Shown here: in pieces, positions 16,131 to 64,000 of the stretch | Position numbering within the stretch: position 1 is the stretch's first letter | Layout: each line of letters begins with the position of its first letter | From: Trichoplax adhaerens | Taxonomy: Eukaryota; Animalia; Placozoa | DNA length: 64,000 bases | Assembly: GCF_000150275.1 (NCBI RefSeq) | Contig: NW_002060956.1 | Span: forward strand, 1,827,353 to 1,891,352 | Reading direction: 5' to 3' | Program-made: the position numbers and the translations under genes | Notes under the pieces: model-generated | The model's database searches: none | The model's input: the letters and a program-made list of their open reading frames with translations, nothing else | Told to the model about the DNA's origin: nothing

Positions 16131-17306
16131 ATGCAGTGAGTAAAGTTAGCCCACTTAATTGATTCGAGTGCTTGCTTTTTTTAACTTTCAGCTTTCAAAT
16201 TTAAATTGCTTTATTATCAAAAGGTTCAGGCAGAGTTTTTTCATTTTCTTGCTTTGATCACTTGCTTTTATTATTTTAGATTTAAAGCTCCTAGAACGTT
16301 AATCAATTTGTTTCAACATCCTGCTATCATTATAGCATGGATTATCGGTCTATGTGGAATGATAGCTAACGTTACGCTTCTAATTGCTATTTGGAAAAGA
16401 TATCAGGCAACCTTTAAAAAGGGCTGGTTCAAAAAGGAGTTAAAGACAGTGGAGTTATATATCATTAATTTAGTATTTGTTGATATACTAGGTGCAACCT
16501 ACCTGCTTATCATTGCTGTTGCAAATACTGTTTATGACGTTCATGATACCCGTGGAAAGTTACCATCTTCAAATTTTAGCAATATATTCACAAATAATAG
16601 CAAGCCTGTATCTATCGTTAATAGATGGGGAATCCATCCCCTCTGCAACATAGCCAGATTTCTTTACTTTTTATCACTTACTATGTCTGTTTTAATTACA
16701 CTATTAATCGCTATAGAGCGCTGGTTAGTTGTCGTTGGATCTTTAAAAACTTCAGAAGTTAACAGAACAAGAGCGAGAGTAATATTAATACTCTGTTGGT
16801 TATTTTGTATCGGGAAGGCTCTTTATCCATTTATACGATCTATAGTGGTCTTAGATCGTGTTAAGAATCAAACACGCAGCAATCTAATGTTATGCCTACT
16901 TGCAGATCCTGATATTTCTAATGTACGTTATTTCAACATCATTAACTTAAATATCTTTTATATTTCTTACGTTTTCTGCATTTTAATATACATGTTATTG
17001 CTGATTAAAATGCATCAAGCCAGAAAGATTACTCTATATAACAGTAAGAAACCGCAAGTTATTTTAGCAAAAACTATGGCCCTTATCACCGTTTGTAATT
17101 TATTCTCCAATCTTCCCATTACAATCATTATTATATGCAGAATGAGAGGATTAACTATTGTTTTTAACCCAAATTTTACACATGCTTCTGCGATTTGTAT
17201 CGTACTGATGTTTGTCAGTACAATTAGTAATCCAATTATCTACATTAACAGAAATCATCAAACTACGAATCGTAGTCAACGCCGCGTACGCATGAGAAAA
17301 TTATAA
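16131..17306 (+). CDS. Class A (rhodopsin-like) GPCR 1, LGR-like 7TM core without ectodomain; probable 5-nt first coding exon 16131-16135 plus exon 16280-17306 (~343 aa)
   Basis: Seven hydrophobic helices with IINLVFVDILG, WGIHPLC, IAIERW, LAKTMALITVCNLFSNLP and NPIIY. The listed ORF starts at a TTG. ATGCA|GTGAGT (donor 16136) splices in phase 2 to TTTTAG|A TTT AAA (acceptor 16279), giving MQFKAPRTL. Confidence 0.88.
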
Positions 17307-20300
17307 TAAATTAGCGGCTATAGAGACCGGATCATATTATAGCCGTATTAAGCAAAAAATAGGTTAGCAAATTTAAGTTCTTACTAATAATAACGCCAAT
17401 ACCAATTTCTGAATTTAGTATAAGGTAGTATGATTCAATTGAAAATATAAACACCGATACAGTAATTACTTTCTCTGGTAAGCTTTGCTATATATGACGT
17501 TCATATTACGGAACTATGTCCGGATGTTATGTTTACTTAGTGACAATATTCTTCAATGTCTTTAGAGTGATCAGTAGACTAGCATATACTTATATACTTT
17601 ATTCCCGTAGCAAGTTAATCCACAATCTAATATTGCATTTTAAGGCGAAACTTAAACTCAGTTGCACAGTACTACATATTGCAATCATATAATTGTAAAC
17701 CTCCAAGGTAACCATTCTAGAAGAAAACAACTTGTGTATATTCTTATTAGAATTTGATGATCCGTTTTTGAAATTTGCAAACCATAGAACTAGCTTCGAT
17801 CATGTTATTTATTTTATTGCATAGCCTGTGGCATTCCTAGGATACTTTGTAATTAAAATAATACTATTTAATTATAGACAACAATGCGTTTAATACGTAC
17901 ATGTATAGAGATATCCTTTCCATGCAGCTCCTTTTAAGAATCTTACCACCTAGGGCATTTTAGAGATAAGTAGTTATTAATTTCTTAGTTTACTAAAAGA
18001 AAGAGCAAAGACTTGAAATTCTTGTAATGATAAAGAATATTACGTTCAATTTAATCTATATTAATATTTAAGATCTTTTATTTTATTCCTTCATTCTTAA
18101 GAATTCGTTGTCGCCTCGATTAAAATCGTGTCTTAAACGAAATTATCTCATATTACACGATCAAATAAATTTAATATCTTTCAGTATCAAAAAAAATCTA
18201 AATTAAGCATACTACTATCTATTATAGATTATTATATTAGTTTCTAATGCCTTGACCATCCCATTGCCATTCTATTGCTTAAATGTTTTATCACATATAT
18301 TAGCGCAGCCTGTGAAGCTATGAGTAATTGTAAATCTTAGGTCTATGTACCGTATATTTACTTTATTAGGTACATTTAAATGGTACTGATGTATTCATTA
18401 TGGCAAATGATTGATGATGTCTTTTATCAGATCATTAGGCAGCGTCTCGATCGCATTTAAATACTGCGTATATAAAGATACAAAATCACCCCACATACGG
18501 CGTTGCTTTATGGATATAGCTTCGACAGGACCATTAATTCAATCCATCACAATCGCCTTATAGATATTAGCAAAAATATTATAATATTTGTCCATCAGCT
18601 AATGGATAAAAAAAAAATATCATGATTTAGAGTTTAACAGGTTAATATATTTGAATTAATCATCACTGAACAGTAAATATATTTAATCGAGTGTAAATTC
18701 TATTATATTAAAATTCAAATAATCAATATCTAAATATCTTTATACAATATCATTTTATTCATCTTATACAGAAAGGCCGTCAATTCAGTGATATTCAAAA
18801 TCACATAGGAATTTTTTCTATTTCCAATGGTATCAAATATATTAAATTAAATACGATAATTGAGAAAATGCCCATTAAATTATATACGAGTGATTATAGT
18901 AGCTGTCAATAATGTATGCAGTTTTCATTGGACTATTCTAATCTCGTTGTTAACTTGTGATTGCCATAAATAACTCCAGCGCAAGCTATCTTTTTCTCTT
19001 ACATGTATCCGTAATTTCGGCATTATTGACAATAACGATATTAAATAACCATGCACACCTTAAAAATTACTGCTATGGTTTTGTGCAATTATGCGATCTT
19101 ATGATCTACGTTTGGCATTTATGATTAGAAGCTAATTTCGGAGATATAATCCGTTATGCTATTACTTCAATTTTTTATCTTCTTATGTTAAGTATCATGA
19201 ATCACGATTTGTTTTATTTTAGTAGCGATGAAAAATGATTCGCATAATATCTATATGGTCATTCTCTTTCCAATATCAACTATTATTGAAATCAACACCA
19301 TTAAGTTCGCAACTTTGCTTGCAGTCTTGATATTGAAACATCGTATTATAAAATTCGAATTATAGCTGCCTTTACAATAATTGCATAAAATTTGGAGCAC
19401 CGATACATAGTGCAGTTTATAATTGAATACTAATATAAAATCTCTTTCGATATACTTCGAGTATATGTCCTATGTACTCAGTGATTATCCATCTTGCATG
19501 GAGTAAAGGAAAATTTTATACAAACTAGCAGAATTACACGTATTGCGTCCCAACAAGATTTATCAGTTCCTTCTTGCATTTCTACGATAAAAACGATTAC
19601 CTTTAAATGTTCGAAAACACCTAAAATGATTTGCAATGCAATACGGCCATCTAGCTGGAAATACGTCAATAATGAATCAAAACAGTCTTAACAGTTAATC
19701 TTCCGTATCAAAATCAAGCATGCTTCTGTGCATTATGCGCAGTACAGTAATGTAACCTACAGCATCTACCGATATATGTTATTAATTACAACAGATCATT
19801 AATTAAATTTAATGCATTTTTGTCGTTAATGAAATTAAAATATAATCAGTTCTTTAGCACAAATTTAACGCTGAGCTAAGTATGTTGCTAGAATCTCATT
19901 TGTATTCATAAAATCATCCGACGTTAATTGGTAAGTATGATTACATTAAGAATTCATTATCAAAGTTAAGTACGGGTAGGTTTAATATTCAGTGCTTAAT
20001 TATTAGTTACGGCAAATATTTAAAGAGTCATAAAGCACGAGCCTGAATTCCATTTGGTAAAGCGGGCGCCTCTACAGTAAAATCCTGGTTGCCGTCAAAG
20101 AAAATCTACAATATACTAGAAATTTTTGGACGATAAAAAGATTGCAAATATATTAATTAGTCATTGTGTAGATGTTTTCAAAGTTAAATCACTTTTAACT
20201 AAATTAATTGGGAACTATCGAGCTTTTTTAAATGGATTATTTTGGATAGGCAGTAAAATTTATGAAGTTTACAAGCAGTAACACAGAGTAGTTAAGAATT

Positions 20301-21735
20301 TAACATCACATTGTAAGCAATATATAACATACAAAAATTTAACATTCTGTTTCAAAAAATTGATCGTGAATTATCATCAATCATTTAGGTCATAGCAAAT
20401 TAATTTACATTAATATTATATTTTTTCCTTACAAGAGTAGTTAATTTTTATCTATTTTAATGAAGTGATTGATCTTTACAGTGTTCAAGTATAAAATAAT
20501 TATAACGGTAATAGACTATTATAAATTGCATCTAAAGATTGTATTTAGCGTTACTACCGTTGTATAGCATATATATGACCACAAAGACCAATACGTGTGT
20601 AATAAGCAGTTTTACTACATACAGTATGCAATGCATAACGACCGAAACTAATTTGTTTACAAAGAATGTAGATTCTACCAATTTTAATTATTTATTTCCT
20701 CCGCAATGATTAGTTAAAGCAGATGTTACAGAAATCAGAGATGTTGTGCACTTGGAATAAAGAAATTGAATTTACGGTTGGTATGAATAGTTGACCATTA
20801 CAAAATAAGAATATGCATATATGTGCTATTATTGCAAAGGAGTAATGGCCATTTACGGATGCATGTCATGGAGACATATGTTCAGCTTTCAAAAATTTTA
20901 TCAATATACCAAAATATTCAATTTTAGCTGTAACAATTCGAAATAAGGATTTCTAATCTTTACGAGAATTTGAAAACTTTTAGCTCCTTTCATAAACATT
21001 CCAATTCCCTTTAATAAGAATTTATAAAAAAATAAACAGTGAAAGAGGGCGACAGCCAACTCAATCCAGGTTCTTAATAAATCGTCTATGCAAAATCGTA
21101 GAATGCTTCCAGTTTAAAATCTAAAATATGGAATAGGAGCAGACAATGTCCTCGCAAACTATTTTGATTTGAATCGGTTTCAAGTTTAATAAATGATTGA
21201 TCCATTTTCGGCTGAAATCTCGATCAAATATCATGATAATTTATAATAAAGCACAGACATATAAAATCAATTACTACTTAGTAAGATTCATGATTGGGAT
21301 AGAAAAAGGAAGTTGACTTCCTGCCTGATCGATCAAATGTATGAGGGCGATTAGTATCTAATATCATATTCCATTTCTTCACCCCAAATAACATATGGCA
21401 TTCAGTAGTGAACATTGAGAACATAATTAGCTAATTAAGTGAACTATTATTAACCAAATTAATATAATATTACGCATGTGTAAAAGCACGATGATAACTA
21501 CCACCGACAATATAAATATTCCGCTTGTGGAAACAAATTTCAGTTCGCGTGTAAATAATTCAAGCCCGAAAACGATAGTTAGTTCCATCGAAAATCGTGA
21601 TAAATCTTATTGTCGAACCAAAGCCTTTAATTAATATAAAAAATCGTACCCTACATACGAAAATTTGAAAGTTTCTACCGAAGCTATATCGTAATTATTG
21701 CGTAAACCATAGTTATTATTCTCTTCAATTTAAAC

Positions 21736-22812
21736 ATGTTCTATTCACTTTATCAAGGAAATAACACGGCAAGAGCGACGGCGTGGATTATCGGTATGTT
21801 AGGCTTAATTGGAAACGGTTGCATAATTATTTATTCTCGAAAAAAGAATTTATTGAAAGTCAGTAATAAAGGACTAAGTACTCGTTCTAGACAAGCGACC
21901 CGTAAATCATCAGTCATATGCAATTATCTAATTTTTAATTTAGCCATTGCCGATTTGTTAGGCGATCTTTATTTAACTATAATTGTATCAGCCGATACAT
22001 ATTATGGAATTAATTATCCAGTAATTTATCAGACTATCAATCCTGTTAATGAAACAAATATTTGGATCTTTCATCCATTCTGTCATATTGGTAGATTTTT
22101 TTACTTTACATCTACTATTTTGTCTATACTGATTACATTAGTTATTGCCGTTGATCGATTTGTGAGCGTCATTTTTCCCATTAGCAAATTAAAACTAAAT
22201 CTTCAAAGATGTCGAATTATTATGCTAATTTGCTGGATCTTAGCAAGTAGTTTCGGTCTATATCCCACTATTAGAGGATTTATCAACGTAAATTTATTTG
22301 CCAAGATGTTCTGGTTCCCTATTAATGCATGTCTTTATGAAGATACTGATGAACAGCTTGTTACGGACTATATCAACGCAAAATATGCAATTTTTTACAC
22401 TTGTAGTTGTTTAGTATGTCTTTGCTATATTTTTATTTTGATTCACGTAAAAACTAAAAGTAAATCTAGTAGTGCCACTCAATCTGAAGCTATTCAACGT
22501 CATATCCTTCTCATCATGATCGCCGTTACCATTTCTAATATTGGCAGCCTATTACCGTCAACGGTCATGTTTGAACTCTATAGATTAAATACTCCATTTA
22601 CTCCTTTATATGATTATATGCTAACCGTAGGTACCATGATAACATTCGTTAATACCGCAGTTAATCCAATAATTTACATGGTTATGTCACCTTCTTTGAC
22701 CAGGAAACTCTTCAAATGTTGTAAGGTTAGATTTTATATACGCAACAGAGTTAACGATGCTTCGCATTGTATAGATGAGGACAAGCCAGTGCATAATCCT
22801 CAACAATCGTAA
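21736..22812 (+). CDS. Class A GPCR 2, intronless, LGR-like 7TM core, 358 aa
   Basis: GN in TM1, NLAIADLL, WIFHPFC, IAVDRF, ISNIGSLLP, NPIIY. TATAAA at 21635, ~100 bp upstream. Confidence 0.93.
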   Translation: MFYSLYQGNNTARATAWIIGMLGLIGNGCIIIYSRKKNLLKVSNKGLSTRSRQATRKSSVICNYLIFNLAIADLLGDLYLTIIVSADTYYGINYPVIYQTINPVNETNIWIFHPFCHIGRFFYFTSTILSILITLVIAVDRFVSVIFPISKLKLNLQRCRIIMLICWILASSFGLYPTIRGFINVNLFAKMFWFPINACLYEDTDEQLVTDYINAKYAIFYTCSCLVCLCYIFILIHVKTKSKSSSATQSEAIQRHILLIMIAVTISNIGSLLPSTVMFELYRLNTPFTPLYDYMLTVGTMITFVNTAVNPIIYMVMSPSLTRKLFKCCKVRFYIRNRVNDASHCIDEDKPVHNPQQS

Positions 22813-28541: not shown

Positions 28542-29172
28542 TGTCACAAAACAGCTTTGCAACAAGATAACGCAATATACGATCAATAAGTCAATTCCTT
28601 GAACCACGTATCAAGGAACGATATCTGCACTATCACGAACACTTTTGCTCTACTAGCAGACTACACAAAGACTTAGACGCCTCGTATTTTACGTTAAATA
28701 CTAAGTTGGAGAAATTCACTTTATTTCACGATATACTGCATTTATATACTACTCCTCAATAGTTCATGAGTCATAGTTAATACAATTAACATTAGAATCA
28801 TTTACTGAATTAGATATTAATTTTAGCTACTGCTCCCTTAATGCAGACAACAGTATTTACGAACATAGACATGCGATGACTAATACAGAATAGTCAGATT
28901 ACGATATGTCCTATCACGGAACATTTCCATGATAATTTACAGTCTACCATAAGTAAATTACAATCGCAATGATTCGAACTGTAAGCAGATGATTTGCATT
29001 CCCTATCATAACTATTAATTTCAGTATGTGTATAAGTGTTACTGTCATAAAAAGTCAGTGCTATATTACAACACAGTATATCCAAATTAGAAGTTAACTA
29101 AATAAGGATAGGGTAATAGAATTATCCTAACATAGATATTTCTACTGTAATACAGTATATAACACTGTAACA
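28542..29172 (-). mobile_element. Family A solo-LTR-like element (631 bp)
   Basis: Starts TGTCAC and ends GTAACA. Flanks ACCTC / ACGTC form a 5-bp TSD with one mismatch. The first ~200 bp are nearly identical to 33492-33700 and similar to 38002 onward and to the reverse complement of the 50280 end. Confidence 0.72.
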
Positions 29173-30065: not shown

Positions 30066-31133
30066 ATGCCTTCATTGCTTCAGAACAATCCAGTAGCACG
30101 AATTCTCGCCTGGACTTTTGGTATTATGGGTATTTTAGGCAATCTGACTATTTTATGGTATCAACATAAATGTAAACTTCTTAAAATCAGAGCCCATAAC
30201 TCCTCAAATACTCATCAGCAACATGCTACAAGAAAAACATCTCTAGTAACCAGATATTTAATCTGCAATTTGGCGATAGCCGATCTTCTCGGTTCCATTT
30301 ATCTTATTATTATTGCTTCTGCTGATGTTTACTATGGCTATCATTATCCAAATGTCTTTCGAAATCCTAATCGTGGAAATGTTACGAATCCATGGTTACT
30401 TAGCCCTTTCTGCCATCTTAGTCGCTTCATATTTTTTCTTTCTTCCATTATGTCTATTGCACTAACATTTGTTATAGCCGTAGATCGTTTTATTGCCGTT
30501 ATATTTCCTTACAGCAAATTTCGATTCGATCTTTACCGTTGTCGTATAATTACTACGGCATGTTGGTTTATTGTTATATGTTATGCTCTTATTCCGACCA
30601 TTCGTCATCTTATATATCGCATTACGAAAGGATTTGATTCAAATTCTAATCTTTGCTTATATCGTGATGTAGTAAGAAAACATACTTTTAATTTCATACG
30701 ATCCAGGCAAATTATTTATTTCATATTAACCGGAGCAATTATAGTGCTATATACTGCAATTATCATCTATGTTAAATTGAAAAGCAGTAACATGAGATCT
30801 CAATTAAACAAAGTTGAGAAAAAAATATTTCTAGTTATGCTCTTTATCACAATTTCTAATATTTTCACTTTGCTTCCTACATTTCTCGTAATGATATTCT
30901 CTAATAATCGAGAATTTAATATCTCTATCCAATCATTTCAGCTTATGCTTCCCATCTTTATATTCGCTATCTATTTTAGTGCTGCTATCAATCCAATTAT
31001 ATATTTTGTATTTACTAATTCAAGTAAGTATAAGGCTATTCTATCTTCATGTTTCAAAACTCAAAAAGAGACCACAATTCCGTTAAACACACACTGCAGT
31101 ACTTTACAAAAATTAAATTTTGTGGACTCATGA
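30066..31133 (+). CDS. Class A GPCR 3, intronless, LGR-like 7TM core, 355 aa
   Basis: MPSLLQNNPVARILAW, GN, CNLAIADLLGSIYLIIIASAD, WLLSPFC, IAVDRF, ISNIFTLLP, NPIIY. Confidence 0.93.
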   Translation: MPSLLQNNPVARILAWTFGIMGILGNLTILWYQHKCKLLKIRAHNSSNTHQQHATRKTSLVTRYLICNLAIADLLGSIYLIIIASADVYYGYHYPNVFRNPNRGNVTNPWLLSPFCHLSRFIFFLSSIMSIALTFVIAVDRFIAVIFPYSKFRFDLYRCRIITTACWFIVICYALIPTIRHLIYRITKGFDSNSNLCLYRDVVRKHTFNFIRSRQIIYFILTGAIIVLYTAIIIYVKLKSSNMRSQLNKVEKKIFLVMLFITISNIFTLLPTFLVMIFSNNREFNISIQSFQLMLPIFIFAIYFSAAINPIIYFVFTNSSKYKAILSSCFKTQKETTIPLNTHCSTLQKLNFVDS

Positions 31134-33228: not shown

Positions 33229-33491
33229 TCATATGTATTTTCATGACGCAGAGTGAATGCCAATTAACTTCTACGATAAATTTCTAGTATTCACTCTGAT
33301 ACCACATAAATATTTATAATCAACGTTTCCAAATACAATTTCTGAATTTATTCTGTTATGTGCAATATGCTCGAGCATTAAGAACTTCTTTATATGATAC
33401 TTTCGTAATTTTCTTTTATGATTCCTAATGCAGCATTGGTTATAACCGTGAAATCATAGAATACAAATTGTCAATGATTATAATATTCTGG

Positions 33492-34699: not shown

Positions 34700-35713
34700 A
34701 TGGCATCGTCATTCCTTCAGAATAATGAAGCAGCTAGAATTCTCGCTTGGTCCATTGGTATAGCGGGAATTTTATGCAATTTTGCTATTTTATGGTATAA
34801 TTATAAATACAAACTTCTTAAAATCAATATCCAAAACCCATTAGCAAATCATCGCCAACAATCTGCACGAAAAACATCAACTGTAACTAATCATTTAATC
34901 TGTCAATTGGCAATAGCGAATCTTCTCGGTTCCATTTATCTTATTATTATTCTTTCTGCTGATCTTTACTACGGTTATCATTATCCAAATCTCTATCGAA
35001 ACCCTAATCGTAAAAATGTCACAAACCCATGGCTTCTTAGTCCTTTCTGCCATCTTAGTCGCTTCTTATATTTCACTTCTTCTGTCATGTCTATTGTGCT
35101 ACCTTCAGTTATTGTTATAGATCGCTTTATTGCTATTATATTTCCTTACAGCAAATTTCGATGTAACAGTTTTCGCTACCGTTTAATTACCTTGATGTGT
35201 TGGCTTGTCGTAATAGCCTATGCTCTCATCCCAACTATTCGTAATATCGCCTTTCGATTAACGAAAGCATTCGATACAAACGCTAACCTTTGCTTATATC
35301 GTGATATAGTGCTAATATACAGTACCAATCACCGACTCTCTAGGCAAATCATATATTTTATACTAACCGGAATGATTGCCATATTGTATGTTATAATTTT
35401 TATTTATATCAAATTTAAAGGGCGTAACATGCAATCTCGAACGAACAGACTTGAAAGAAAAGTGCTCATCATAATGATCATTATTACTATTTCTAACATT
35501 TGCACTTTGTTTCCTGCATTTTTTGCAAGGGCTGTATTTAGAAATCCGGCATTTAATATCCCCAGACAAACATTTCAGCGAGCATTGCCAATCTTAATAT
35601 TTGCTTCGTTCGCCAGTGGTGTCATCAATCCAATTGCATATTTTATATTAAGCGTTCTAGGTAAATGTAATGCTAACCTTCTAGCATGTTGTAAGGCTCA
35701 AAAGACACTATAA
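34700..35713 (+). CDS. Class A GPCR 4, intronless, closest paralogue of GPCR 3, 337 aa (D2.50N, frameshift-shortened tail)
   Basis: QLAIANLLGSIYLIIILSAD, WLLSPFC, VIDRF, ISNICTLFP, NPIAY. Long stretches of nucleotide identity with 30066-31133. Confidence 0.9.
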   Translation: MASSFLQNNEAARILAWSIGIAGILCNFAILWYNYKYKLLKINIQNPLANHRQQSARKTSTVTNHLICQLAIANLLGSIYLIIILSADLYYGYHYPNLYRNPNRKNVTNPWLLSPFCHLSRFLYFTSSVMSIVLPSVIVIDRFIAIIFPYSKFRCNSFRYRLITLMCWLVVIAYALIPTIRNIAFRLTKAFDTNANLCLYRDIVLIYSTNHRLSRQIIYFILTGMIAILYVIIFIYIKFKGRNMQSRTNRLERKVLIIMIIITISNICTLFPAFFARAVFRNPAFNIPRQTFQRALPILIFASFASGVINPIAYFILSVLGKCNANLLACCKAQKTL

Positions 35714-38574: not shown

Positions 38575-38780
38575 AGGAAATAATTGTATCCGTGCATTCG
38601 ACTAAACCAAATCAAAGCAATAATATGTATCAACGTATTATTCTATTGACAAGCTATTATATCGTTACCATATTGTAAACTATAGCATTAAGAAATAATG
38701 ACGCACTTATTCTAAATGCGATACTGAATTTGATAGTTTCTGCAACAAAATAGATAATTTCCCAATGACTTACAGTAAGT

Positions 38781-43936: not shown

Positions 43937-44995
43937 ATGCATTTCTCGTTCCTACAAGATCATCACGCAGCTCGAATCTTTGCTTGGTCTATTGGCATAT
44001 TCGGTGTTTTAAGCAATCTTGCAATTTTATGGCGTAACAATAAATATAAATTCGTTAAAACTTTTAATAGCAATCCATTGGATAATCGCCGTAATCAACC
44101 TGCAAAGAAAGTGTCTACGATTATTAATTATTTAATCTGTCACTTGGCAACTGCTGATCTCCTAGGCGCCTCTTATCTAATTATTATTGCTTCTGCTGAT
44201 CTTTACTATGGCTATCATCATCCAAATATGTTTCAAAATCCTAGTCCTGGAAATAGTACGAATCTCTGGCTTCTTAGTCCTTTTTGTCATCTTAGTCGTT
44301 TCTTAATTTTCTGTACTTCTATAGTATCTATTCTGATAACATTTGTGATTGCAATAGATCGATTTATTACTGTTATTTTCCTCCGTTATAGATTACGATT
44401 AAATATCTTTCGTTGTCAAATGATCCTTTTAGCATGTTGGCTTTTCAGTATAGGCTATGCTCTCATTCCAACTATTCGTAATATTATTGTTATGCACCCG
44501 GTATCGAAGTATCGATTTGATATGGTTTCGAATCTTTGCCTATATCTCGATGTAGTACCTTATTACTCCGAAGCTTACATCCTATCCAGGCAAATTATTT
44601 ACTTTACGTTAATCGGACTGATTGCAATGATGTATCTATCAATTATAATTTATATCAAAGCCAGAGGACGCAATTTAGGATCTCGAATGAACAGAGTTGA
44701 AAAAAGGATATTTCTTATTATGATCATTATAACTATCTCCAATATTTGCAGTCTCCTACCTTCATTCCTTGTGTTTGCGCTAGCCCGAGATAAATCTTCC
44801 TTGATCACTATTCAATCTGTTCAGCGCACTTTCACCGTATTCATAGTTGCTGTATTCGCAAATACTGCAATCAATCCATTTGTATATTTTATATTAACTA
44901 CTTCAATTGAAAATAGAGCCCCTTTCTTGAGGTTTAGTACTAAAAAAAATAAGGTAAGACCAGTAAATAAACCCGAAAATTTCAAGCCAAAATGA
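43937..44995 (+). CDS. Class A GPCR 5, intronless, LGR-like 7TM core, 352 aa
   Basis: HLATADLLGASYLIIIASAD, WLLSPFC, IAIDRF, ISNICSLLP, NPFVY. TATAAAAA at 43840-43847. Confidence 0.93.
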   Translation: MHFSFLQDHHAARIFAWSIGIFGVLSNLAILWRNNKYKFVKTFNSNPLDNRRNQPAKKVSTIINYLICHLATADLLGASYLIIIASADLYYGYHHPNMFQNPSPGNSTNLWLLSPFCHLSRFLIFCTSIVSILITFVIAIDRFITVIFLRYRLRLNIFRCQMILLACWLFSIGYALIPTIRNIIVMHPVSKYRFDMVSNLCLYLDVVPYYSEAYILSRQIIYFTLIGLIAMMYLSIIIYIKARGRNLGSRMNRVEKRIFLIMIIITISNICSLLPSFLVFALARDKSSLITIQSVQRTFTVFIVAVFANTAINPFVYFILTTSIENRAPFLRFSTKKNKVRPVNKPENFKPK

Positions 44996-48669: not shown

Positions 48670-50330
48670 ATGAACCGTATGAAAGTTAGCCACTAGATGG
48701 TTTATCAGATACCAATAAATAAGTCATCAAAAAAGCAGCGCTTAATCAGGGTTGAAGTATTTAAAGCCACATAATACTGAACAGTGAAGAGTATAGTCAT
48801 AGCAGTAAACTTGCTCTAATTTGATGTGATTGTTAGCATCAATAACAGTTATTTATTAATGTCTAGAACCTTCGCTTTTTCTTTGATTTCTTAACATCTT
48901 GGGCATGATCAAGTTAAATTAACACGTAATAAGTTTATTTTAAACTTATATCAGCATACATCCATAATTTTAGGACTAATTGGATTTATAGCCAGTGGTG
49001 GTCTACTCCTAACTGCTACAAAACGTTCTTATACGAATAGTAATGATGCTATTCTTAGCCGCCCTAAACGCAGACGAGTACATCCAACGGTTCGAATACT
49101 AGTAATCAATTTAATGATCGTCGATTTTTTGGCGCAGTTTATCTTACCATTATTGCTATTGCTACTGTTTACTATGTTCATCCTCCCATCGGAGGGAAAC
49201 AGTCTCTACTAGATGGAGATGTCAACTGCAGTAATAGTCCATTTGTCATTTTGTGGGCAATTAATCCATTTCGTAGCCTTGCTAGATTCCTGTAGCATCC
49301 CTCGATGACTATGTCAATTTTATTAACACTTTTAATAGCAATTGAACGGTATTTGGTATTAATTCGATCGCTTCGGTCAACTACAGCAAATATTAGCGGT
49401 TTTAATATCATTTTGGTATTATGTTGGCTATTTTGCATCGCTAGAGCGCTCTATTCTACGATACGAGCTCTATTAATTTCACATCTGGTAAAAAATCAGA
49501 CACGAATCAATTTAATGTTATGCTTACTGGCAGATACTGATATTTGAAATACAATATTTAAATATACTTAATTTAAGTATATTTTATGTTGGCTTCATCC
49601 TGACCGTTATTATTCATACAGCATTACTGATCCAGCTACACCAAATTAAAGGCTTAGTTTAATATAATCAAGTAAAGTCGGGAATACCCTTAGCTAAGAC
49701 ACTCATTTATATAACTCTAAGCAATTTTATATCCATGATTCCAATTACTGTCATCATTATGTGCCACACGTTAGCGTTACCTATTATTAGGAGTCCAACT
49801 TTTATGCACACCAGCCCAATTTGTGTCGTATTCTTGTATATTAGTGTCACGGTACGAACTACCGTGAAGAAATAGCTATCTAAATTTGGTGAATATAATA
49901 TAGTGATAATATATTGCAACTAGTTACTTACAATAGGAATTACTCTAATTGTAAATGTGTTACAGTAAATTTAATGCGGTGCTGTAATGTGCACTGAAAT
50001 GATTCTGTGAAAGGACATGCTGTAGTCCGACTGTGAAAAATTAGTTAGGAGATGTTCTCACGTAAGTATTTCTATAAGATGACTCATGAATGTTAGCTGC
50101 TGTAGAAGGGTATATAAGCCCGTCAGATAGTTAAATAAAGTAGTTCTCAATTGTCTAGTTGAGTTTAACGTAGAATCAAAGGCGTCTAAATTCTTGTGAA
50201 TAGGGATACTGAATCCGCAGATTTTAAGAGATTTAGAGATTTATTTTATGTTATCCTTGTCACGAAGCTGGTTTGTGACAATTAGCTCAATAGGTAATCC
50301 TCTAATCTATTTGAAGCCAACAAATTAAAC
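48670..50330 (+). pseudogene. GPCR pseudogene, paralogue of GPCR 1, with frameshifts, stops and an LTR-like insertion in TM7
   Basis: LNLYQHTSIILGLIGFIAS, VINLMIVDFL/frameshift/GAVYLTIIAIA, WAINPFRSLARFL*, MTMSILLTLLIAIERY, VKNQTRINLMLCLLADTDI*, then ICVVFLYI[insert]SSIGNPLIY. Confidence 0.9.
49845..50280 (+). mobile_element. Family A solo-LTR-like element (436 bp) inserted in pseudogene TM7
   Basis: TGTCAC...GTGACA terminal inverted hexamers and a perfect 5-bp TSD ATTAG (49840-49844, 50281-50285). Internal TGACTCA at 50080, TATATAA at 50111 and AATAAA at 50134 are in U3-R-U5 order. Confidence 0.9.
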
Positions 50331-56265: not shown

Positions 56266-57183
56266 ATGTTCTATTCCCTACTACAAGGCAATGAAACATC
56301 TAGAATATTGGGATGGATAATAGGAATAGTTGGTTTATTGGCCAATTCTAGTCTTCTTCTGTATCATTTTAAACGTAAATTGTTTAAATCATCCAAAACT
56401 AATCATCACAAAATTATTACATCAAAGTCACGCTCTATTACCAAATTTTTAATTCGTCAGTTAGCCCTAGCTGACTTACTTGGTTCCCTTTATGTTATTA
56501 TTATCAGTTCAGCCGATAGTTATTATGGTTATCGTTACCCTGAAACAGTCATATTCCCGCACAGTAAAGCAAGGTTAAATTTATTTAAAAGCCGGATTGT
56601 GATATCTGTTTGCTGGTTAACTTGTTGTGCATTTGGTCTTATTCCAACAATACGAGGAATAATATCAGCTCCGTACTTTGCACAAAGTTTCAATTGGCGC
56701 CTAAACATTTGCATGTATACTGACATAGTAAAAACCATTTTAACTATTTTCTTTAAAACTAGGGCTGCAATATACTATGGTTGCTGTAGCTTAATTGCAT
56801 TGATTTATGTTGCCATCATCATCTATGTTAGAAGTAAACGACGCAGAATTGCATCCGGAATGAATCAAATTGAACGACGTATCTTCATAGTCATGATGAT
56901 CATCACAGCTGTAAATGTTTGCAGCTTGCTCCCTTCAACAATTATATATGGGATGCCTTATAATATCAGACAGCTCCCTCATATTGTTTATGCAACGTCT
57001 ATCACAATTATATTTACCTTTTCTAACGCTGCTATCAATCCGTTCATTTACATATTTTTATCATCCTCACGAAAGCGTTATATTCTATGCTGTGGAAATT
57101 CTTCTAAAGTAGCTGTTAAGAATGTTGTCGCTGTTAGTGAAAACAAACCTAAATCAACAGAAGTTGCAGTGTTTTCCAGGTAG
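56266..57183 (+). CDS. GPCR 6: open ORF (305 aa from the ATG at 56266) with an in-frame deletion of most of ECL1 and all of TM3 including DRF
   Basis: MFYSLLQGNE start as in GPCR 2. QLALADLLGSLYVIIISSADSYYGYRYPE is joined directly to TVIFPHSK. TM4-TM7 and NPFIY are intact. It may be a young pseudogene. Confidence 0.8.
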   Translation: MFYSLLQGNETSRILGWIIGIVGLLANSSLLLYHFKRKLFKSSKTNHHKIITSKSRSITKFLIRQLALADLLGSLYVIIISSADSYYGYRYPETVIFPHSKARLNLFKSRIVISVCWLTCCAFGLIPTIRGIISAPYFAQSFNWRLNICMYTDIVKTILTIFFKTRAAIYYGCCSLIALIYVAIIIYVRSKRRRIASGMNQIERRIFIVMMIITAVNVCSLLPSTIIYGMPYNIRQLPHIVYATSITIIFTFSNAAINPFIYIFLSSSRKRYILCCGNSSKVAVKNVVAVSENKPKSTEVAVFSR

Positions 57184-57879
57184 CAGCCGCAGAATTGTAA
57201 GATGAAATTCCTGAAATTACTAAATACTGCTATACTCGTATGGTAGGTTTTACCTTATTCTCATTCTACTCTTTTCTATTCATTTTAACCAGCATAAAAT
57301 GAACTTGAACCACCTAATTAGCAATACTTAAAATTACTAAACAAACATGGTACCAAGATATTGATGAAAGTTGACCGATTGACAGTTATAACATTTGTCA
57401 AAAACGATCAATTTATCCGTTGTATTCACTTGAAAATATCGTGTTATATCTAAATTAATATCCAAAATGTAATTTTTTCTTCTAGATATCAACTGAACGT
57501 ACTTTAACTGATATCACATACTTCTCGATTGAATATTTAGGCTATAAGCTTATACCCTGTAAATTACTATTCATTCCTGTAACTAAATTTTTAATTACCA
57601 AATCTGTTACATTAACCTCTATTCTACTAACATTTCGTAGTAAACTTAATACCTTTAGAAATCAATGAATTCGACAAAATTGTGAAATTTTAATGAAAGC
57701 AGTGTTCACACGACAGTACAATTATGTTACAATTAAAAGGAAAAAAAAAATGGATGCGAATAAGTAGGAAGTATTTTCTGATCATATCGATTTTCTCATG
57801 CCAATGTAGCATAAATTGATAGCCATTTACTTAAGGCTATGATAGATTTAGTTCATAGGATGGATTTACAATAGCTAAT

Positions 57880-58990: not shown

Positions 58991-59932
58991 CAATTGCCTA
59001 AAGTTTTAAATCATAGTGTCAAGGTGATTCGTATATTATAGATATATTATAATGTAATTTGTCTAGTTCCGATAAATTACTAAAGTCTTCCTTTACTATA
59101 CATCTTTAACACATTAACCGCAACATAGTTTTCATCAGATAGTTTAGCCCTAATATTGCGCTACTCATTTATCCGTTCTTGTGCATATTCAAGTATAATT
59201 ATGCTCACATACAGTAAATAATCGATATTTATCTACCCGAAGCATATTTTAGTCAATACTTCGCTTAAGAAGTTTTAATCTAGTGAAAACCCATGGTTGC
59301 TAAGGATTTTTGACGTTAGAACATCGTCAAGAGTTTTTGAATGGCGCGGTAGGCAAATGGCAAGGAGAGTAAGCCAAGCCAAGCCATAGGCTCGAAATTT
59401 TAGATTTTGGTTGCAAAATTTAGATTGTAATGTCTTCTAATTTTCTGTAAATCAATCATTATAATGCAAGACTTAATCAACAAACTGAAGTAGTTCAACT
59501 TTTACAAGTTTATGATATCTAAAGCATATGATGTTATTTTTCGAAAGAGGTTTTAATCGGTTACGGTATCAACGGTATAATCTATACTAGTTTTGCAGTA
59601 TGGTATAATAGCTACAATATCTGTATTTAGTACATTTGGTATTAACCGTAAAATAGCTATTGATTTAATCAAATAAAGATTAAATGTTCATTTTTTTCGG
59701 ATTTAAATCAGTTGAAGCTTACAAATTGTCCGGTACCACAATAATTTGTTATTATATATGAGTACAAGTACTTTTATGACTATACAGTATACGGATTGCC
59801 CTAATCGTTTATTTTAAATTTTTTACTTAATTAATGACAACATTTTCGACGCAAGAAACTTTTCAAATATTGGTAAGACTAGACGATTTGCTTTATGCGT
59901 ATCTATAACAAACTCAAAGATAGGAACTAACA

Positions 59933-61100
59933 TGCATAGTAAAGGACAGAAAGCAGAGTCCTTTATAGCTATTAGTATATAGCTATTATTACTTTACTAT
60001 AGAAAATACCTAGAAAGTGATAGTATCTTTAAGTTTTACCCTGCCTAATCATCATGTCGCCATCTTTACTTCTTCATTATTTTACGAAGTGTTGTATAAA
60101 TTACTATAGAAATAACCTAGGAGCAAACGCCTAATCTGAAGAAAGGGCCTTTGATAGTCTATTGGGGATTGTAAATGAATTTGACTTAGTAACAAAGCCC
60201 TATCCATCCAGAAAAGGGACTTATAACATGAGAGTAAAGTACTGTAATGTAGGTTATAATCATACAGTTACCGTATAACTTCATACTAAAACATCAAGTG
60301 TCAAAAGTAATATCAGAAAAGTAGTCATCGTTGTCATGTAAAATCTTTTGATAAATGAATATGTGATCTTTATAAAATTCGGATTTTTCGGAATCAGATT
60401 CCGGAACCGGTCATATCTGTGTCCTATATAATTTCTGGATTTTAATTTTTGGAAAATATTGCAAGAGTTAATTTTTGAAATTTGAACTATTCGTTGTTAA
60501 TTTGAAATTTGGGAATTTTATGACAAGACGTGAATGTTGCATTAGGAAAGTTTATTTGAGAAAATGGATAATAAGATGGCAAATGGCAGAAGTTGTGTTG
60601 ATTCTTAAGTAGTTAGACTGTTATTTTTATGACTAAATCTTAATGTTTAAAGATTAATTTTTAGACTTTTATAATGTATTAATGATTAGAAATTATATTG
60701 GAAGTGAAGATTGACGTATTTTATAGTTTGTTTGTTGGTTTTATAGTCTTTTGTAAGGGAATCATAATGTTAGTTATTTCTCAACTTTGAATGATTTTTG
60801 TTTTCTTAAGTGGTACAAAGCAGTTTTTTAAAATGAATCTTAAGAGCGATTAGTTAATAAATGTTTAGTTTTAAATACCACTGACAGCTCCGCGAAGTCT
60901 ATAAATGATAGTGCAATCAGAAAATTTAGAGAAGAGAGTAAAGAAGATTTTGAAGAACTTGTTGAATTCTAAAGGCCTTCTGGGTCGAATTCTTGCAGTA
61001 AAAATGTTCTTCTTTTTGTGTTGACCAGAGTGTAAAGAAAGCGGAATCAAAGTTTGTTACAAGTTTTGTAGCTTGATTTCTACACATTGCATTTCATAAC
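59933..61100 (+). mobile_element. Family B repeat, near-complete copy with a ~200-bp internal deletion near 61018
   Basis: Reverse-complement match to 38781-40235 (CTATAGAAAATACCTAGAAAGTGAT, ATCATCATGTCGCCATCTTT, AATTTGACTTAGTA) and direct match to 32525-33228. Confidence 0.85.
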
Positions 61101-63744
61101 ACATGACAATATTTACCTCTATTTAAGCCCTCCGTAGACACTTTTGAATCGTTACTTTTAAATTTAATCTACCAAAAATAGAAATTTAAACATTAAGGAC
61201 TGTACAATAAATACACAATACAAATTTCAACTTTACTTAAAGGTCACGAGTCTGTTTATTAGCAACATTACTTTCCAATAGTATTCCTAGTCCTTTTTAC
61301 CATTTTAAAAGATGTAATGTGATAGCTAATGACATTATTTTCAATTCAAGAAGTAATGATGCTTATTGGCGATAGAACCAGTTCTATTGCACTGTTTCTT
61401 CGAAACGGAAATTGTTTAATTGTATCGTTGACTTTTCGAACTGTAACTTAGCTATCTGAGGCTAATTTGTTAACTATAATGCCACACTTACGAATGAAAA
61501 TCGCTTCTGTATTGTACTAGCTAGGTGCTGAACTTCTTAGTAAAGTGACGTCGTAAAATGAAATAGTTGATCATTACATGACGCTATTATTTGCTGAAAT
61601 TAATTTGGCTTACATAGCGCGTAAAGAACGATTGATAACACAATTTAAGTTATCGATCTATTAATTTTAGTGGTAATAGCGTTCAAGTTTCGTTATTAAA
61701 TGTAGAAAAATATCTTTATAAATTAAAAGCTCTACTTGTATTATCAAATATTTACCATACTATTTTTACATAATTGAAGAAATAGTATTCATAATTTAAG
61801 TCAATGTACAATAGAGTCGATATTTATGAAAGTTAAAGCAGTGTCTGTGTAATGGTTTAAGATAGTGAATGTGATAATGAAATTGATTTAGAAATAGGCG
61901 GTTGTAAATATTATGGTAAAATTTTAATATTCAACCGATAATAGATTTCCGTTAACGATTGTGTAGATTTAGGTTAAGTGCTATGTAAAATACGTGTAGT
62001 AATCGAAATGGCGGTTGTCACACTTTTATACAATCTGTTAGGCACTGAGCGGATTTAAGTTGGCACATAATGTATTAATTAAGACATTATATGCCCTAGA
62101 ATAATTAATACTAGTGCAAACTCCCGTCGCTTTGCTGACGGTTTACGATAATGTGCTCATTTAACAGATAGTAATACCATTTGTCGTACTGTAGAACTGT
62201 CAGAGGTTCAGTAACTTTATACCGTGTACTAGTTTGGCACAAGTATATAGGGAAGCGCATTTGTACTTAAAAAGGGAGAAGAATAATTTAAACTGTGGGG
62301 TGGAACGACAGTTGGATAAAGATAGCTTTGTAATATTACCTAGTAAACTTCTAGACTGCTGGACTGACTGTTACTGTTGACTAAGGTCCTTCACTAAGTT
62401 AGTGAAAGTAGTGACGTTTGGTAGCAGATTTATAATACGGTAGAAGGTTTTACAGGTAATCATAAAAGAAGAATTCATTGTAACAAACGAAATTTATGGC
62501 AGTCTGTTATAATTTGAAATAATAATACAAATAATGATTTAATCAAATATATCCTTCACTCTGAAAACTTAATCCAATTTATAGCAATATTTACTTCTCT
62601 GCTCTTATTAAATAGATTAAACTCCCTAAATAAATTTTATCCAAGGAAAGTATATGAAACAGACCAACTACTACGAAATTTCTCTGTTACTTTTTACGTT
62701 ATCAATATAATTTAGGACTGAAATTCTTCAGCCATGGGCAAACGTACACTTGATAAAAGCGGTTATTTTCTGAATAACTTCAGTATTATATGCTTGTCAT
62801 TATCTAATAAGATACTAGAATCACTAGACAATTAATAATAGTTATCGTCGTAAAATGTAAAAATATAAATACAAATAATAATAATTATTGATTGTTTATA
62901 TGCAATCAATTTTCTCAGCGAAAGTTTTATTATCAATTATCCACAATAGAATGTAAAATATTAACTACCGTACCCAGCGACTGACAAATATAATATGACC
63001 TGTATCGTATTACCGGTAAAAATAACTAAAGCAGATCTGTAATATATTGTCAAATCACTCATTAATAAGCAATTCTGTCCTGCAATGTATAAATTATAAA
63101 TTAATTCATCAGCATAGAGTTAGCTATAGCTATCTGAGGGTCCTGAAAGGCAATTAGTTATCACCAATCGACAATAAAATATTGATTATTATTTATTAAA
63201 ATTTAATGAGTATATAAAGTAAATCAAAATAGAGTTCAACTCGATAGTAATTAACGAACAAATTTATTTATTGTCAAACTACGAAAGACTGTGAAGCTAG
63301 AAGTAGACTTTATTCTACTTTTCGTTGAGCCTGTACCTAGACGCAAATACATATACCGAGAAAGCAGCATCTATTTTGTAATTATTTTTAAACATATCTA
63401 AATAAGTTATTATAGCTGTATCCTAATTTTCTACAAGATCGACAGATGTACATATCATATCTATTAATTATTACTAATACTTTGAAAGATTAAAATGAAA
63501 TTGACCTGCAAAACAAACTAGTTACATAATAATAAGCGCCCATAATTTACGATTATCTAATTTAAATTTATAAGCAATAAATTTAATAAAAAATTTTAGT
63601 TTAACCTATGCAGCTTAATAAACGTCTACAATATCTATACAAATTTGTGTCATTGCATCAAATCACTTTTAAGAAGATCTAATAAGCGTCAAAATAAGTT
63701 AAAGTTAACAATTTTTTGCTCAATCCCGAATTGATTTGATGATT

Positions 63745-64000
63745 ATGTCTTACTCGCTGTTTCAAGGCAACGACTTTGCAAGATGTTTCTGTTGGATATT
63801 CGCAATTATTGGGATCTTGGGTAATGCCTACATTATAATTTCCTGTTGCACTAAAAAAATAAGTAAAATAGCTCCTAAAAAGAACTCAACGCATCANAAC
63901 AATTCAATTTCAGAGAAATCGACCAAAGTGACGCATTTGTTAGTATGTCAACTAGCCATAGCAGATCTTCTAGGTTGTTTATATCTTTTAATCATTGCGG
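63745..64000 (+). CDS. GPCR 7, 5' part (TM1-TM2), runs off the window
   Basis: MSYSLFQGNDFARCFCWIFAIIGILGNAYIII...KSTKVTHLLVCQLAIADLLGCLYLLIIA. There is an alternative in-frame ATG at 63739. The ORF track missed it because the window contains no stop for it. Confidence 0.9.
   Translation, partial: MSYSLFQGNDFARCFCWIFAIIGILGNAYIIISCCTKKISKIAPKKNSTHXNNSISEKSTKVTHLLVCQLAIADLLGCLYLLIIA

What the first reader, a model, noticed from the sequence alone, without database searches (positions are those of the whole stretch)
16131..64000. Tandem array of ectodomain-less LGR/RXFP-like GPCRs: a candidate lineage-specific chemoreceptor family
Seen: at least seven same-strand paralogues spaced ~4-12 kb apart, essentially intronless, several with their own TATA box, each starting only ~10-20 residues before TM1 (M..SL(L/F)Q.N..AR...W). 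Established: L(L)....R...W...GN / NLA.ADLL...YL.IIA.AD / W..S..C and a TM6 like LAKTMALITVCNLFSNLP (no CWxP tryptophan; cf. LH receptor IAKKMAILIFTDFTCMAP) mark the LGR clade, whose members normally bind protein hormones through a large LRR ectodomain. Inference: this family lost the LRR and hinge and expanded by birth-and-death like an olfactory-receptor cluster, so it may detect small molecules or peptides directly in the 7TM pocket. ECL2, TM5 and ECL3 look much more variable between copies than TM2-TM3.
Basis: partly seen in the sequence, partly recalled or inferred. Interest (0 to 1): 0.8.

Follow-up and report, generated by a model that had tools for sequence, protein, structure and literature searches.

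The report
Placozoan ectodomain-less LGR-like receptor array
This stretch of the Trichoplax genome holds a tandem row of eight short, almost intronless G-protein-coupled receptor genes. Their membrane core is most like that of the hormone receptors of the LGR family, but they have no hormone-binding outer domain, and they belong to a placozoan family of at least about 40 genes that I found described in no paper.

Summary
The window (Trichoplax adhaerens, G000:C1401) carries eight same-strand class A GPCR loci 4.6-9.2 kb apart. Six are intact (g1-g5, plus g8, which is cut by the window end). One (g6) has an in-frame 144-bp deletion of ECL1/TM3. One is a pseudogene.

Each ORF starts about 8-12 residues before TM1. 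No LRR-coding sequence lies in the window or its flanks.

- A 25-52-sequence profile of the family hits TSHR, FSHR, LHCGR and RXFP1 first in the PDB, 15-25 bits above somatostatin receptor 2.
- An exhaustive HMM search gives about 58 short placozoan-type clusters first, then LRR/LDLa/CUB receptors of GRL101/relaxin-receptor type.
- Foldseek and VIA-align put LGRs on top.
- LGR signatures are shared: polar 6.44 and an acidic residue at the outer end of TM2.

In trees the short family is one clade, sister to the sampled LGRs. A position inside them is not rejected (AU p=0.12). So loss of the ectodomain is plausible but not shown.

Birth-and-death evolution is supported. A chemoreceptor role is untested speculation. 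The TATA boxes are no more than chance.

The scan's other notes on this genome concern LRR-bearing LGRs, not this family.

The parts
16131..17306 (+). g1: divergent member, 343 aa, E-R-W at the DRY position. Two exons: 5-nt exon 1 (ATGCA, 16131-16135), 144-nt GT..AG intron, exon 2 at 16280-17306.
   Evidence: The H2 gene model has the same structure. PF00001 E=2e-17.
21736..22812 (+). g2: intact single-exon receptor, 358 aa.
   Evidence: H2 orthologue is 357 aa and single-exon.
30066..31133 (+). g3: intact single-exon receptor, 355 aa. This is the copy that was modelled.
   Evidence: (99% to the H2 'GRL101-like' protein P0001).
34700..35713 (+). g4: intact single-exon receptor, 337 aa, with N instead of D at 2.50.
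43937..44995 (+). g5: intact single-exon receptor, 352 aa.
   Evidence: the nearest public protein is H2's P0002; 95% identical over the tree alignment.
49131..49845 (+). g1-like pseudogene: three in-frame stops, a frameshift near 49540-49550, the TM3 cysteine lost, TM1 degenerate and TM7 missing.
   Evidence: The twin copy on C1411 is also broken.
56266..57183 (+). g6: 305-aa open frame with an in-frame 144-bp deletion (junction near 56545-56548) that removes ECL1, TM3 and the DRF motif. Probably non-functional.
   Evidence: The intact twin is L004:4006-5058. dN/dS against the twin is 0.15.
63745..64000 (+). g8: first 85 codons only; runs off the window into an assembly gap. The complete twin and the H2 protein are 459-464 aa with an insert of about 110-125 aa in ECL3.

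Best explanation
The window holds a local, monophyletic tandem expansion of a placozoan family that I call S-type. At least about 40 loci of this family were sampled in this genome, and about 58 clusters at 50% identity exist in public data.

What the genes encode (shown):
- Class A GPCRs of 330-370 aa with only about 8-12 extracellular residues before TM1.
- The signalling hallmarks are kept: D2.50, D/E-R-F/Y/W, NPxxY, and the TM3-ECL2 cysteine pair.
- Their 7TM core is most similar to that of LGRs (glycoprotein-hormone, relaxin and GRL101 receptors).
- They have neither the LRR ectodomain nor the cysteine-rich hinge.

How they most likely work (inferred): a ligand, either a small molecule or a short peptide, binds directly to the extracellular loops and the pocket in the helix bundle, and the signal passes to heterotrimeric G proteins.

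How the family evolves (shown): tandem duplication, divergence concentrated in ECL2-TM5 and ECL3-TM7, and loss. In the window one copy is a pseudogene and one has lost TM3. The near-identical second version of the array on contig C1411 has one more gene.

Open questions: whether the family arose from an LGR by losing its ectodomain or split off before the ectodomain was joined, and which ligands it senses.

The confidence given applies to the shown parts (ectodomain-less, LGR-related class A receptors in a birth-and-death array), not to any particular ligand.
For: Class A membership and anatomy: PF00001 in all copies. The AF2 model has seven helices plus H8, pLDDT 88.6.

No ectodomain:
- A Met lies within 5 residues of profile position 1 in 40 of 41 sampled loci and in about 50 independent database proteins.
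- In-frame stops lie 6-13 codons upstream.
- H2 gene models are single-exon, with nothing called between them.
- tblastn with 7 LGR ectodomains finds nothing in the window, its flanks or the twin loci. The same search finds 19 and 10 LRR exon hits upstream of two hinge-type LGR loci, which serve as the positive control.

LGR affinity:
- PDB profile searches, 25 sequences (A2): TSHR 120 bits, FSHR 118, LHCGR 117, RXFP1 104, SSTR2 98.
- PDB profile searches, 52 sequences (A5): TSHR 114.5, FSHR 110, LHCGR 109, RXFP1 93, SSTR2 89. LGR alignments run from just before TM1; the others start in TM2 or TM3.
- After the short proteins, the exhaustive search returns LRR/LDLa/CUB receptors named GRL101-like or relaxin-receptor-like.
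- In the own genome, the best matches after the family itself are exons starting with an LGR-type hinge. These are bona fide LGRs: RXFP1 E=8.5e-63.
- Position 6.44 is N in 52 of 59 S-type and D in 94 of 101 LGRs, against W or F in the outgroups. The acidic residue at the outer end of TM2 is shared.
- Foldseek's top 12 are TSHR, FSHR and LHCGR. VIA-align's top 10 are FSHR, LGR4 and TSHR, Z 26.4-28.7.

Monophyly: the window clade has support 98; the S-type clade has 94-95.

Turnover:
- Pseudogene, TM3 deletion and an extra copy in the twin array.
- dN/dS among paralogues is 0.32-0.55.
- For g5 against the extra copy, N:S is 42:10 in ECL2-TM5 plus ECL3-TM7 and 22:20 in TM2-ECL1-TM3, Fisher p=0.004.
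Against: - The window-only profile (6 sequences) did not single out LGRs. Galanin receptor 1 and SSTR2 scored slightly above TSHR, and single-sequence searches were ambiguous or blank.
- The margin over non-LGR receptors is modest: 15-25 bits, or Z 28.7 against 26.4.
- The ESM Atlas look-up gave only generic class A neighbours.
- The tree's outgroup is two unnamed class A proteins. Type A and B LGRs are missing from it. Long-branch attraction could pull the fast-evolving S-type clade to the base.
- No transcript, expression or ligand evidence was available. A far-upstream or trans-spliced exon cannot be formally excluded.
- The elevated N:S ratio comes from one gene pair and may reflect relaxed constraint.
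Confidence: 0.8

Rival explanations
1. The family descends from a true LGR of the placozoan lineage that lost its LRR ectodomain and hinge. The short N-terminus (S-L-L-Q-N-N..A-R) would be the remnant of the hinge's last segment, the stretch that acts as the P10 tethered agonist in glycoprotein hormone receptors.
For: - Homology with LGRs runs through TM1 to about 8 residues before it. The S consensus 'nneiarilaW' aligns with TSHR 'GYKFLRIVVW' and with 'LAH.SLRL.VW' of the Trichoplax hinge-type LGRs.
- The window-only profile A1 scores the Trichoplax hinge-type LGR exons at 95-116 bits but human TSHR at only 54 bits.
- An S+H clade is not rejected (AU p=0.119).
- LGRs predate placozoans according to Roch and Sherwood 2014 (PMC4079206), so a sister group of part of the LGRs would be nested among them.
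Against: - The best ML and FastTree trees put the S-type clade outside the hinge-type plus type C clade, which has support 99.
- No intermediate was found, such as an S-type gene with a hinge or a decayed LRR exon.
- The one apparent intermediate, L037, turned out to be a hinge-type gene with an intron before TM1 (P0029).
- The greater similarity to placozoan LGRs could reflect the shared AT-rich composition.
Confidence: 0.45
2. The family is an old sister lineage of the LGR 7TM domain that never had an LRR ectodomain. It would be a relic of the pre-fusion receptor, kept and expanded only in placozoans.
For: - The rooted trees place the S-type clade as sister to all sampled LGRs.
- There is no trace of hinge cysteines in any of 41 loci or about 58 database clusters.
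Against: - It requires loss of this lineage in every other animal phylum. No non-placozoan named member was found among the top hits.
- The basal position is what long-branch attraction would produce.
- The sampling lacks type A and B LGRs and has only two outgroup sequences.
Confidence: 0.25
3. The resemblance to LGRs is superficial. The family would be an ordinary rhodopsin-like orphan or neuropeptide-type expansion whose LGR-like motifs arose by convergence or compositional bias.
For: - The window-only profile ranks the galanin and somatostatin receptors slightly above TSHR.
- The ESM Atlas neighbours are prostaglandin-, galanin- and FMRFamide-receptor-like clusters.
- The Pfam score is low (35-78 bits), with weak nematode-chemoreceptor hits.
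Against: - Four independent measures put LGRs first once the profile is deep enough.
- The 147 best PF00001 loci of the genome do not overlap the 117 loci matched by the family profile.
- Polar 6.44 and the acidic residue at the TM2 end are shared with LGRs and absent from the outgroups.
Confidence: 0.1
4. The ORFs are the 3' exons of conventional LGR genes whose LRR exons lie outside the window or were missed.
For: - Hinge-type LGRs of this genome do carry their 7TM domain on one exon, with LRR exons 1-6 kb upstream.
- g1 shows that a tiny 5' exon can be overlooked.
Against: - The ATG position is conserved and stops lie 6-13 codons upstream.
- Gene spacing is only 4.6-9.2 kb, with another receptor gene in every interval.
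- No LRR similarity was found in 64 kb plus flanks, while the positive control worked.
- RNA-seq-supported H2 models have no upstream exons (annotation method in PMC6057997).
Confidence: 0.04

Closest known systems
Type C LGRs (relaxin receptors RXFP1/2, GRL101-like receptors)
   Same: - The 7TM core is similar. After the family's own members, these are the best hits of the exhaustive search.
- Shared motifs: T-D/N at 6.43-6.44, W6.48 in most members, N-x-x-x-N-P-x-x-Y, the NLA.AD..(G/M).YL.II motif and the acidic residue at the outer end of TM2.
   Different: - No LDLa, LRR or hinge. The N-terminus is about 8-12 residues.
- G instead of M at 2.53.
- Intronless, in tandem arrays, evolving fast.
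- Human RXFP1 scores only 93-104 bits.
Glycoprotein hormone receptors (TSHR, FSHR, LHCGR; type A LGR)
   Same: - Best PDB hits by profile (109-120 bits), by Foldseek and by VIA-align.
- The window subclade, like these receptors, lacks W6.48.
- g1 has E-R-W as they do.
- The pre-TM1 residues align with the end of their P10 segment (P10 is described in bioRxiv 10.1101/2021.08.03.454894).
   Different: - No hormone-binding ectodomain, hinge helix or hinge cysteines.
- N rather than D at 6.44.
- About 20% identity.
Placozoan-specific LGRs (41 of the 46 Trichoplax LGRs of Hauser et al. 2022, PMC9545775)
   Same: - Same genome and same kind of lineage-specific radiation.
- They are the closest in-genome relatives of the family (95-116 bits).
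- Their 7TM domain also lies on a single exon.
   Different: - Their 7TM exon begins with a conserved cysteine-rich hinge (..YLCC.VPAKV..C.P....LS.C.N.L.H) and has no start codon.
- LRR exons lie upstream.
- Some have long C-terminal tails.
- They form a separate clade with type C LGRs.
Chemoreceptor-type GPCR arrays (vertebrate odorant receptors, nematode Srw and Srsx families)
   Same: Mode of evolution only: intronless genes in tandem arrays, pseudogenes, a copy-number difference between near-identical versions of the locus, and variation concentrated in the outer TM5-TM7 and loop regions.
   Different: - No sequence kinship beyond class A.
- Nothing is known about expression in sensory cells.
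- Overall dN/dS is 0.3-0.55, with no demonstrated positive selection.

Membership tests
Class A (rhodopsin-like) GPCR, Pfam PF00001 | Match to the 7tm_1 model above the gathering score | tested here: met
   All six long ORFs score 35-78 bits against a cut-off of 30.5.
Class A (rhodopsin-like) GPCR, Pfam PF00001 | Seven helices plus helix 8; D2.50, D/E-R-x, NPxxY and the TM3-ECL2 cysteine pair | tested here: met
   AF2 model pLDDT 88.6, pTM 0.87. Exceptions: g4 has N2.50, and g6 lacks TM3.
LGR (leucine-rich repeat-containing GPCR) | N-terminal ectodomain of leucine-rich repeats | tested here: not met
   No LRR Pfam hit. tblastn with 7 LGR ectodomains is blank on the window, its flanks and the twin loci, while the positive control loci give 10-19 hits. 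H2 models are single-exon.
LGR (leucine-rich repeat-containing GPCR) | Cysteine-rich hinge between the LRRs and TM1 | tested here: not met
   No [YF][LFI]CC hinge motif in any of the 41 S-type ORFs. It is present in all 25 hinge-type exons.
LGR (leucine-rich repeat-containing GPCR) | 7TM domain closer to LGR 7TM domains than to any other receptor family | tested here: met
   PDB profile searches, the exhaustive HMM search with Pfam scans and names of the hits, Foldseek and VIA-align. The margins are modest, and the 6-sequence profile was ambiguous.
LGR (leucine-rich repeat-containing GPCR) | Polar residue at 6.44 (D in LGRs, F in most class A receptors) and an acidic residue at the outer end of TM2 | tested here: met
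   Position 6.44 is N in 52 of 59 S-type, D in 23 of 25 hinge-type and D in 71 of 76 other LGRs; the outgroups have W and F. The TM2-end D is present in 56 of 59, 22 of 25 and 73 of 76. The role of D6.44 is described in 10.1101/2021.08.03.454894.
LGR (leucine-rich repeat-containing GPCR) | Placement inside the LGR clade in a rooted phylogeny | tested here: inconclusive
   The S-type clade is sister to the hinge-type plus type C clade (support 99) when rooted on two class A proteins. The alternative S+H clade is not rejected (p-AU 0.119). No type A or B sequences could be obtained.
LGR (leucine-rich repeat-containing GPCR) | Activation by cystine-knot glycoprotein hormones, relaxin or insulin-like peptides, or R-spondins, through the ectodomain | not testable with these tools
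   Needs pharmacology. It is unlikely without an ectodomain.
Chemoreceptor-type multigene family (birth-and-death evolution) | Tandem arrays with pseudogenes and copy-number change | tested here: met
   Eight loci in the window, one a pseudogene and one with TM3 deleted. There is an extra gene in the C1411 twin. Further arrays lie on C1409, C1410, C1413 and C1414.
Chemoreceptor-type multigene family (birth-and-death evolution) | Expression in sensory cells and detection of external chemical cues | not testable with these tools
   No expression or ligand data could be reached. No paper found treats this family.

The most novel reading that the evidence does not exclude
The S-type receptors are LGR transmembrane modules that were freed from their inhibitory ectodomain but kept a vestige of the tethered-agonist (P10-like) segment as their whole N-terminus. 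They would then be either self-activated, constitutively signalling receptors tuned by inverse agonists, or direct sensors of small ligands at the site where synthetic allosteric LGR agonists bind. That would make them a natural experiment on how LGR 7TM domains work without an ectodomain, and possibly the main chemosensory repertoire of an animal without neurons.
Probability: 0.12. Interest if true: 0.8.

Novelty: new variant of a known kind. Interest (0 to 1): 0.5.

Why it matters
LGRs are one of the few GPCR groups that can be traced across all animals, and they are defined by their large hormone-binding ectodomain. A family of tens of genes with an LGR-type membrane core and no ectodomain raises three points.

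- The LGR 7TM module can evolve as a stand-alone receptor.
- It offers natural material for studying how that module is activated: the tethered agonist, the allosteric pocket, and D/N6.44.
- It gives candidate receptors for the many orphan placozoan peptides or for food and environmental cues in an animal without neurons.

It also warns that database names such as 'GRL101-like' or 'putative glycoprotein hormone receptor' on these proteins do not imply hormone binding.

Tried and rejected
- Single-sequence PDB searches and the 6-sequence window profile did not separate LGRs from other peptide receptors. Only the deeper profiles did.
- The word-index protein search with the family alignment returned just 5 proteins. 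It was useless for sampling relatives.
- The search with a scallop LGR 7TM returned only type C/GRL101-like LGRs. Type A and B LGRs could therefore not be added to the tree.
- PDB sequences cannot be exported to scripts, so no human references were used in the trees.
- Simple LRR regular expressions were uninformative in this AT-rich DNA. I replaced them with tblastn and a positive control.
- The ESM Atlas gave only generic class A neighbours.
- The genome-wide LRR_8 scan scored too few candidates to map LGR loci.
The canonical class A receptors of this genome could not be used as outgroups, and C1411:10-20 kb was not read.
- L037 first looked like an independent ectodomain-less LGR. A database protein (P0029) shows a hinge exon upstream, so I rejected that reading.
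- P0022, a scallop protein that ranked among the short family, is a fused model of two tandem LGRs.
- Short 'GRL101-like' models from crinoids share their 7TM with long proteins of the same cluster and look like partial models.


Full report
**Origin and observation.**
The window is Trichoplax adhaerens DNA (G000:C1401:1827353-1891352, about 30% GC). Its ORFs are 95-99% identical to proteins of Trichoplax sp. H2 that NCBI names 'G-protein coupled receptor GRL101-like'.

ORF listing, Pfam and tblastn among the copies show eight same-strand loci:
- g1 (16131-17306), g2 (21736-22812), g3 (30066-31133), g4 (34700-35713) and g5 (43937-44995) are intact.
- A g1-like pseudogene lies at 49131-49845, with three stops, a frameshift and lost ends.
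- g6 (56266-57183) keeps an open frame but lacks 48 codons covering ECL1, TM3 and the DRF motif, relative to its twin on C1411.
- g8 starts at 63745 and runs off the window into an assembly gap.

g1 has no ATG on its main exon. A 5-nt exon (ATGCA at 16131) with a GTGAGT donor, a 144-nt intron and a pyrimidine-rich AG acceptor restores the frame, exactly as in the H2 gene model.

TATA-like heptamers upstream of g2, g3 and g5 are about what base composition predicts.

**Is there really no ectodomain?**
- In g2-g8 an in-frame stop lies 6-13 codons before the ATG.
- Across 41 related single-exon ORFs sampled from the genome, 40 have a Met within 5 residues of the same profile position; the exception is g1. 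About 50 independently predicted database proteins start at that position too.
- The H2 annotation was made with RNA-seq data (PMC6057997). It calls g2, g3 and g4 as single-exon genes of 357, 355 and 337 aa, with nothing between them.
- tblastn with seven LGR ectodomains finds nothing in the 64-kb window, the flanks or the twin loci. It finds 19 and 10 LRR exon hits within 1-6 kb upstream of two hinge-type LGR exons used as positive controls.
- The AF2 model of g3 (pLDDT 88.6, pTM 0.87) begins TM1 at residue 9.

No transcript data could be consulted, so this is strong but indirect evidence.

**What are they related to?**
A profile of the window copies matches at least 117 loci in the genome. 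The sampled ones fall into two sharply separate kinds:
- 'S-type': short, with a start Met and no hinge.
- 'H-type': exons that begin, without a Met, with a conserved cysteine-rich segment (..STR.YLCC.VPAKV..C.P....LS.C.N.L.H.SL..F.W).

The H-type profile hits RXFP1 at 8.5e-63 and TSHR at 2.8e-55, far above somatostatin receptor 2 at 2.6e-29. H-type loci also have LRR exons upstream. These are the LGRs counted by Hauser et al. 2022 (46 in Trichoplax, 41 of them placozoan-specific; PMC9545775).

For the S-type family the window-only profile was ambiguous. Profiles of 25 and 52 members put TSHR, FSHR, LHCGR and RXFP1 first (120-104 and 114.5-93 bits) and SSTR2 next (98 and 89 bits). The LGR alignments alone extend through TM1.

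The exhaustive HMM search gave 30,672 hits, 729 of them at E<1e-30:
- First come about 58 short proteins of the same architecture. The named ones are all Trichoplax; the rest come from unnamed metagenome or SRA assemblies.
- Then come almost only long receptors with LRR, LDLa, CUB or lectin domains. They are named GRL101-like or relaxin-receptor-like and come from molluscs, echinoderms, a hemichordate and Trichoplax (one search adds named GRL101-like and relaxin-receptor-like LGRs from further phyla).

The 147 loci that best match Pfam 7tm_1 in this genome do not overlap the 117 matched by the family profile.

Signature residues agree. Position 6.44 is N in the S-type family and D in LGRs, but W or F in the outgroups, and the acidic residue at the outer end of TM2 is shared. 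The role of D6.44 and of the P10 segment is described for LHCGR in 10.1101/2021.08.03.454894.

The g3 model's best structural matches are TSHR, FSHR and LHCGR by Foldseek (top 12) and FSHR, LGR4 and TSHR by VIA-align (top 10, Z 26.4-28.7, against 26.4 for the delta-opioid receptor). The margins are small but every test points the same way.

**Inside or beside the LGR clade?**
The trees agree on four points:
- The window copies form one clade (support 98; 90 with g1).
- The S-type family is monophyletic (94-95).
- H-type LGRs (97) and type C/GRL101-like LGRs (99) are each monophyletic, and together they form a clade (99).
- With two unnamed class A proteins as outgroup, the S-type clade is sister to that LGR clade.

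Forcing S-type and H-type together costs 18.5 log-likelihood units and is not rejected (p-AU 0.119).

Type A and B LGRs and named non-LGR outgroups could not be obtained as sequences. The S-type branch is long. So 'lost the ectodomain' and 'never had one' both remain open. I give the first somewhat better odds for three reasons: homology reaches the last pre-TM1 residues, the in-genome LGRs are the closest relatives, and LGRs are older than placozoans (PMC4079206).

**Evolutionary mode.**
S-type genes lie in several arrays: C1401 (three places), C1409, C1410, C1413 and C1414.

C1411:1-42 kb is a 91-94% identical twin of window 33.9-64 kb. It has an extra intact gene, an intact g6 and a complete g8. 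Given the hybrid origin and deep allelic divergence reported for this strain (PMC6057997), it is probably the second haplotype, assembled separately at scaffold ends. A recent duplication is not excluded.

dN/dS is 0.32-0.55 among paralogues and 0.15 for g6 against its twin, so the deletion is recent.

Identity is highest in TM2, ECL1 and TM3 and lowest in ECL3, TM5 and TM7.

In the youngest informative pair (g5 against the extra copy), nonsynonymous to synonymous differences are 42:10 in ECL2-TM5 plus ECL3-TM7 and 22:20 in TM2-ECL1-TM3 (Fisher p=0.004). This fits diversification of the ligand-facing half or relaxed constraint. It is one pair only.

**Function.**
The intact signalling motifs argue for working G-protein-coupled receptors. 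With about 8 N-terminal residues, a 19-residue ECL2 and a 7-residue ECL3, any ligand must act on the loops and the helix-bundle pocket. The g8 subgroup is the exception, with its ECL3 insert of about 110-125 residues rich in glycosylation sites.

Whether the ligands are endogenous peptides, external chemicals or none (constitutive activity) cannot be told from sequence.

**Literature.**
- Placozoan GPCR repertoires and lineage-specific GPCR duplications are known (PMC6067683; 679 family A receptors in PMC9545775).
- I found no paper that describes an LRR-less family next to the LGRs. The library does not hold subscription journals.

**Earlier notes of this scan.**
The notes on this genome describe LRR-bearing LGRs with pseudokinase tails on other contigs. 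They agree with the long C-terminal tails I saw on some H-type exons, but they do not concern this family. A note on g6 lacking TM3 is confirmed and explained here as a 144-bp deletion.

Noticed in passing
L003-L005 (G000:C1411:1-50000) against window 33865-64000: The start of contig C1411 is a 91-94% identical twin of the array's distal half. It has an extra intact receptor gene (C1411:6388-7431), an intact g6 and a complete g8. It is probably the second, divergent haplotype assembled separately, or else a recent segmental duplication.
   Followed up: partly
window 28542-29172; L002:8016-8646; L004:5591-6219 (inverted): A 631-bp dispersed repeat, 94-97% identical between copies. One copy is inserted in inverted orientation just downstream of the twin of g6. 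It may be a small mobile element.
   Followed up: no
window 63745-64000 (g8); L005:1314-2705; P0004, P0003: The g8 subgroup carries an insert of about 110-125 residues between TM6 and TM7 (ECL3). It is rich in Ser and Asn and has several N-x-S/T sites. This is unusual for class A receptors and could act as a small ectodomain.
   Followed up: partly
window 34700-35713 (g4): g4, its twin and its H2 orthologue have Asn instead of the near-universal Asp at 2.50 (LAIANLLG), yet the gene is otherwise intact.
   Followed up: no
P0063 (Glandiceps talaboti, XP_077989864.1): A hemichordate LGR (CUB, C-type lectin, five LDLa, LRR, 7TM) shows a partial protein-kinase Pfam hit in its C-terminal tail (residues 1246-1323, E=2e-5). 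LGRs with kinase-like tails may therefore exist outside Placozoa.
   Followed up: no
L007-L011 (C1384 and C1413 loci): Several hinge-type LGR 7TM exons continue for about 200-250 residues beyond helix 8 with no Pfam match.
   Followed up: no
window 7920-8528 (-) and 12803-13222 (-): Upstream of the array lie minus-strand exons with a Methyltransf_32 match (E=5e-12) and a weak tetraspanin match. H2 annotates a tetraspanin-like gene at the corresponding place.
   Followed up: no
P0022 (Ylistrum balloti, XP_060082553.1): This scallop 'uncharacterized protein' of 1604 aa is a fused gene model of two tandem LRR-7TM receptors. It inflates similarity scores.
   Followed up: yes
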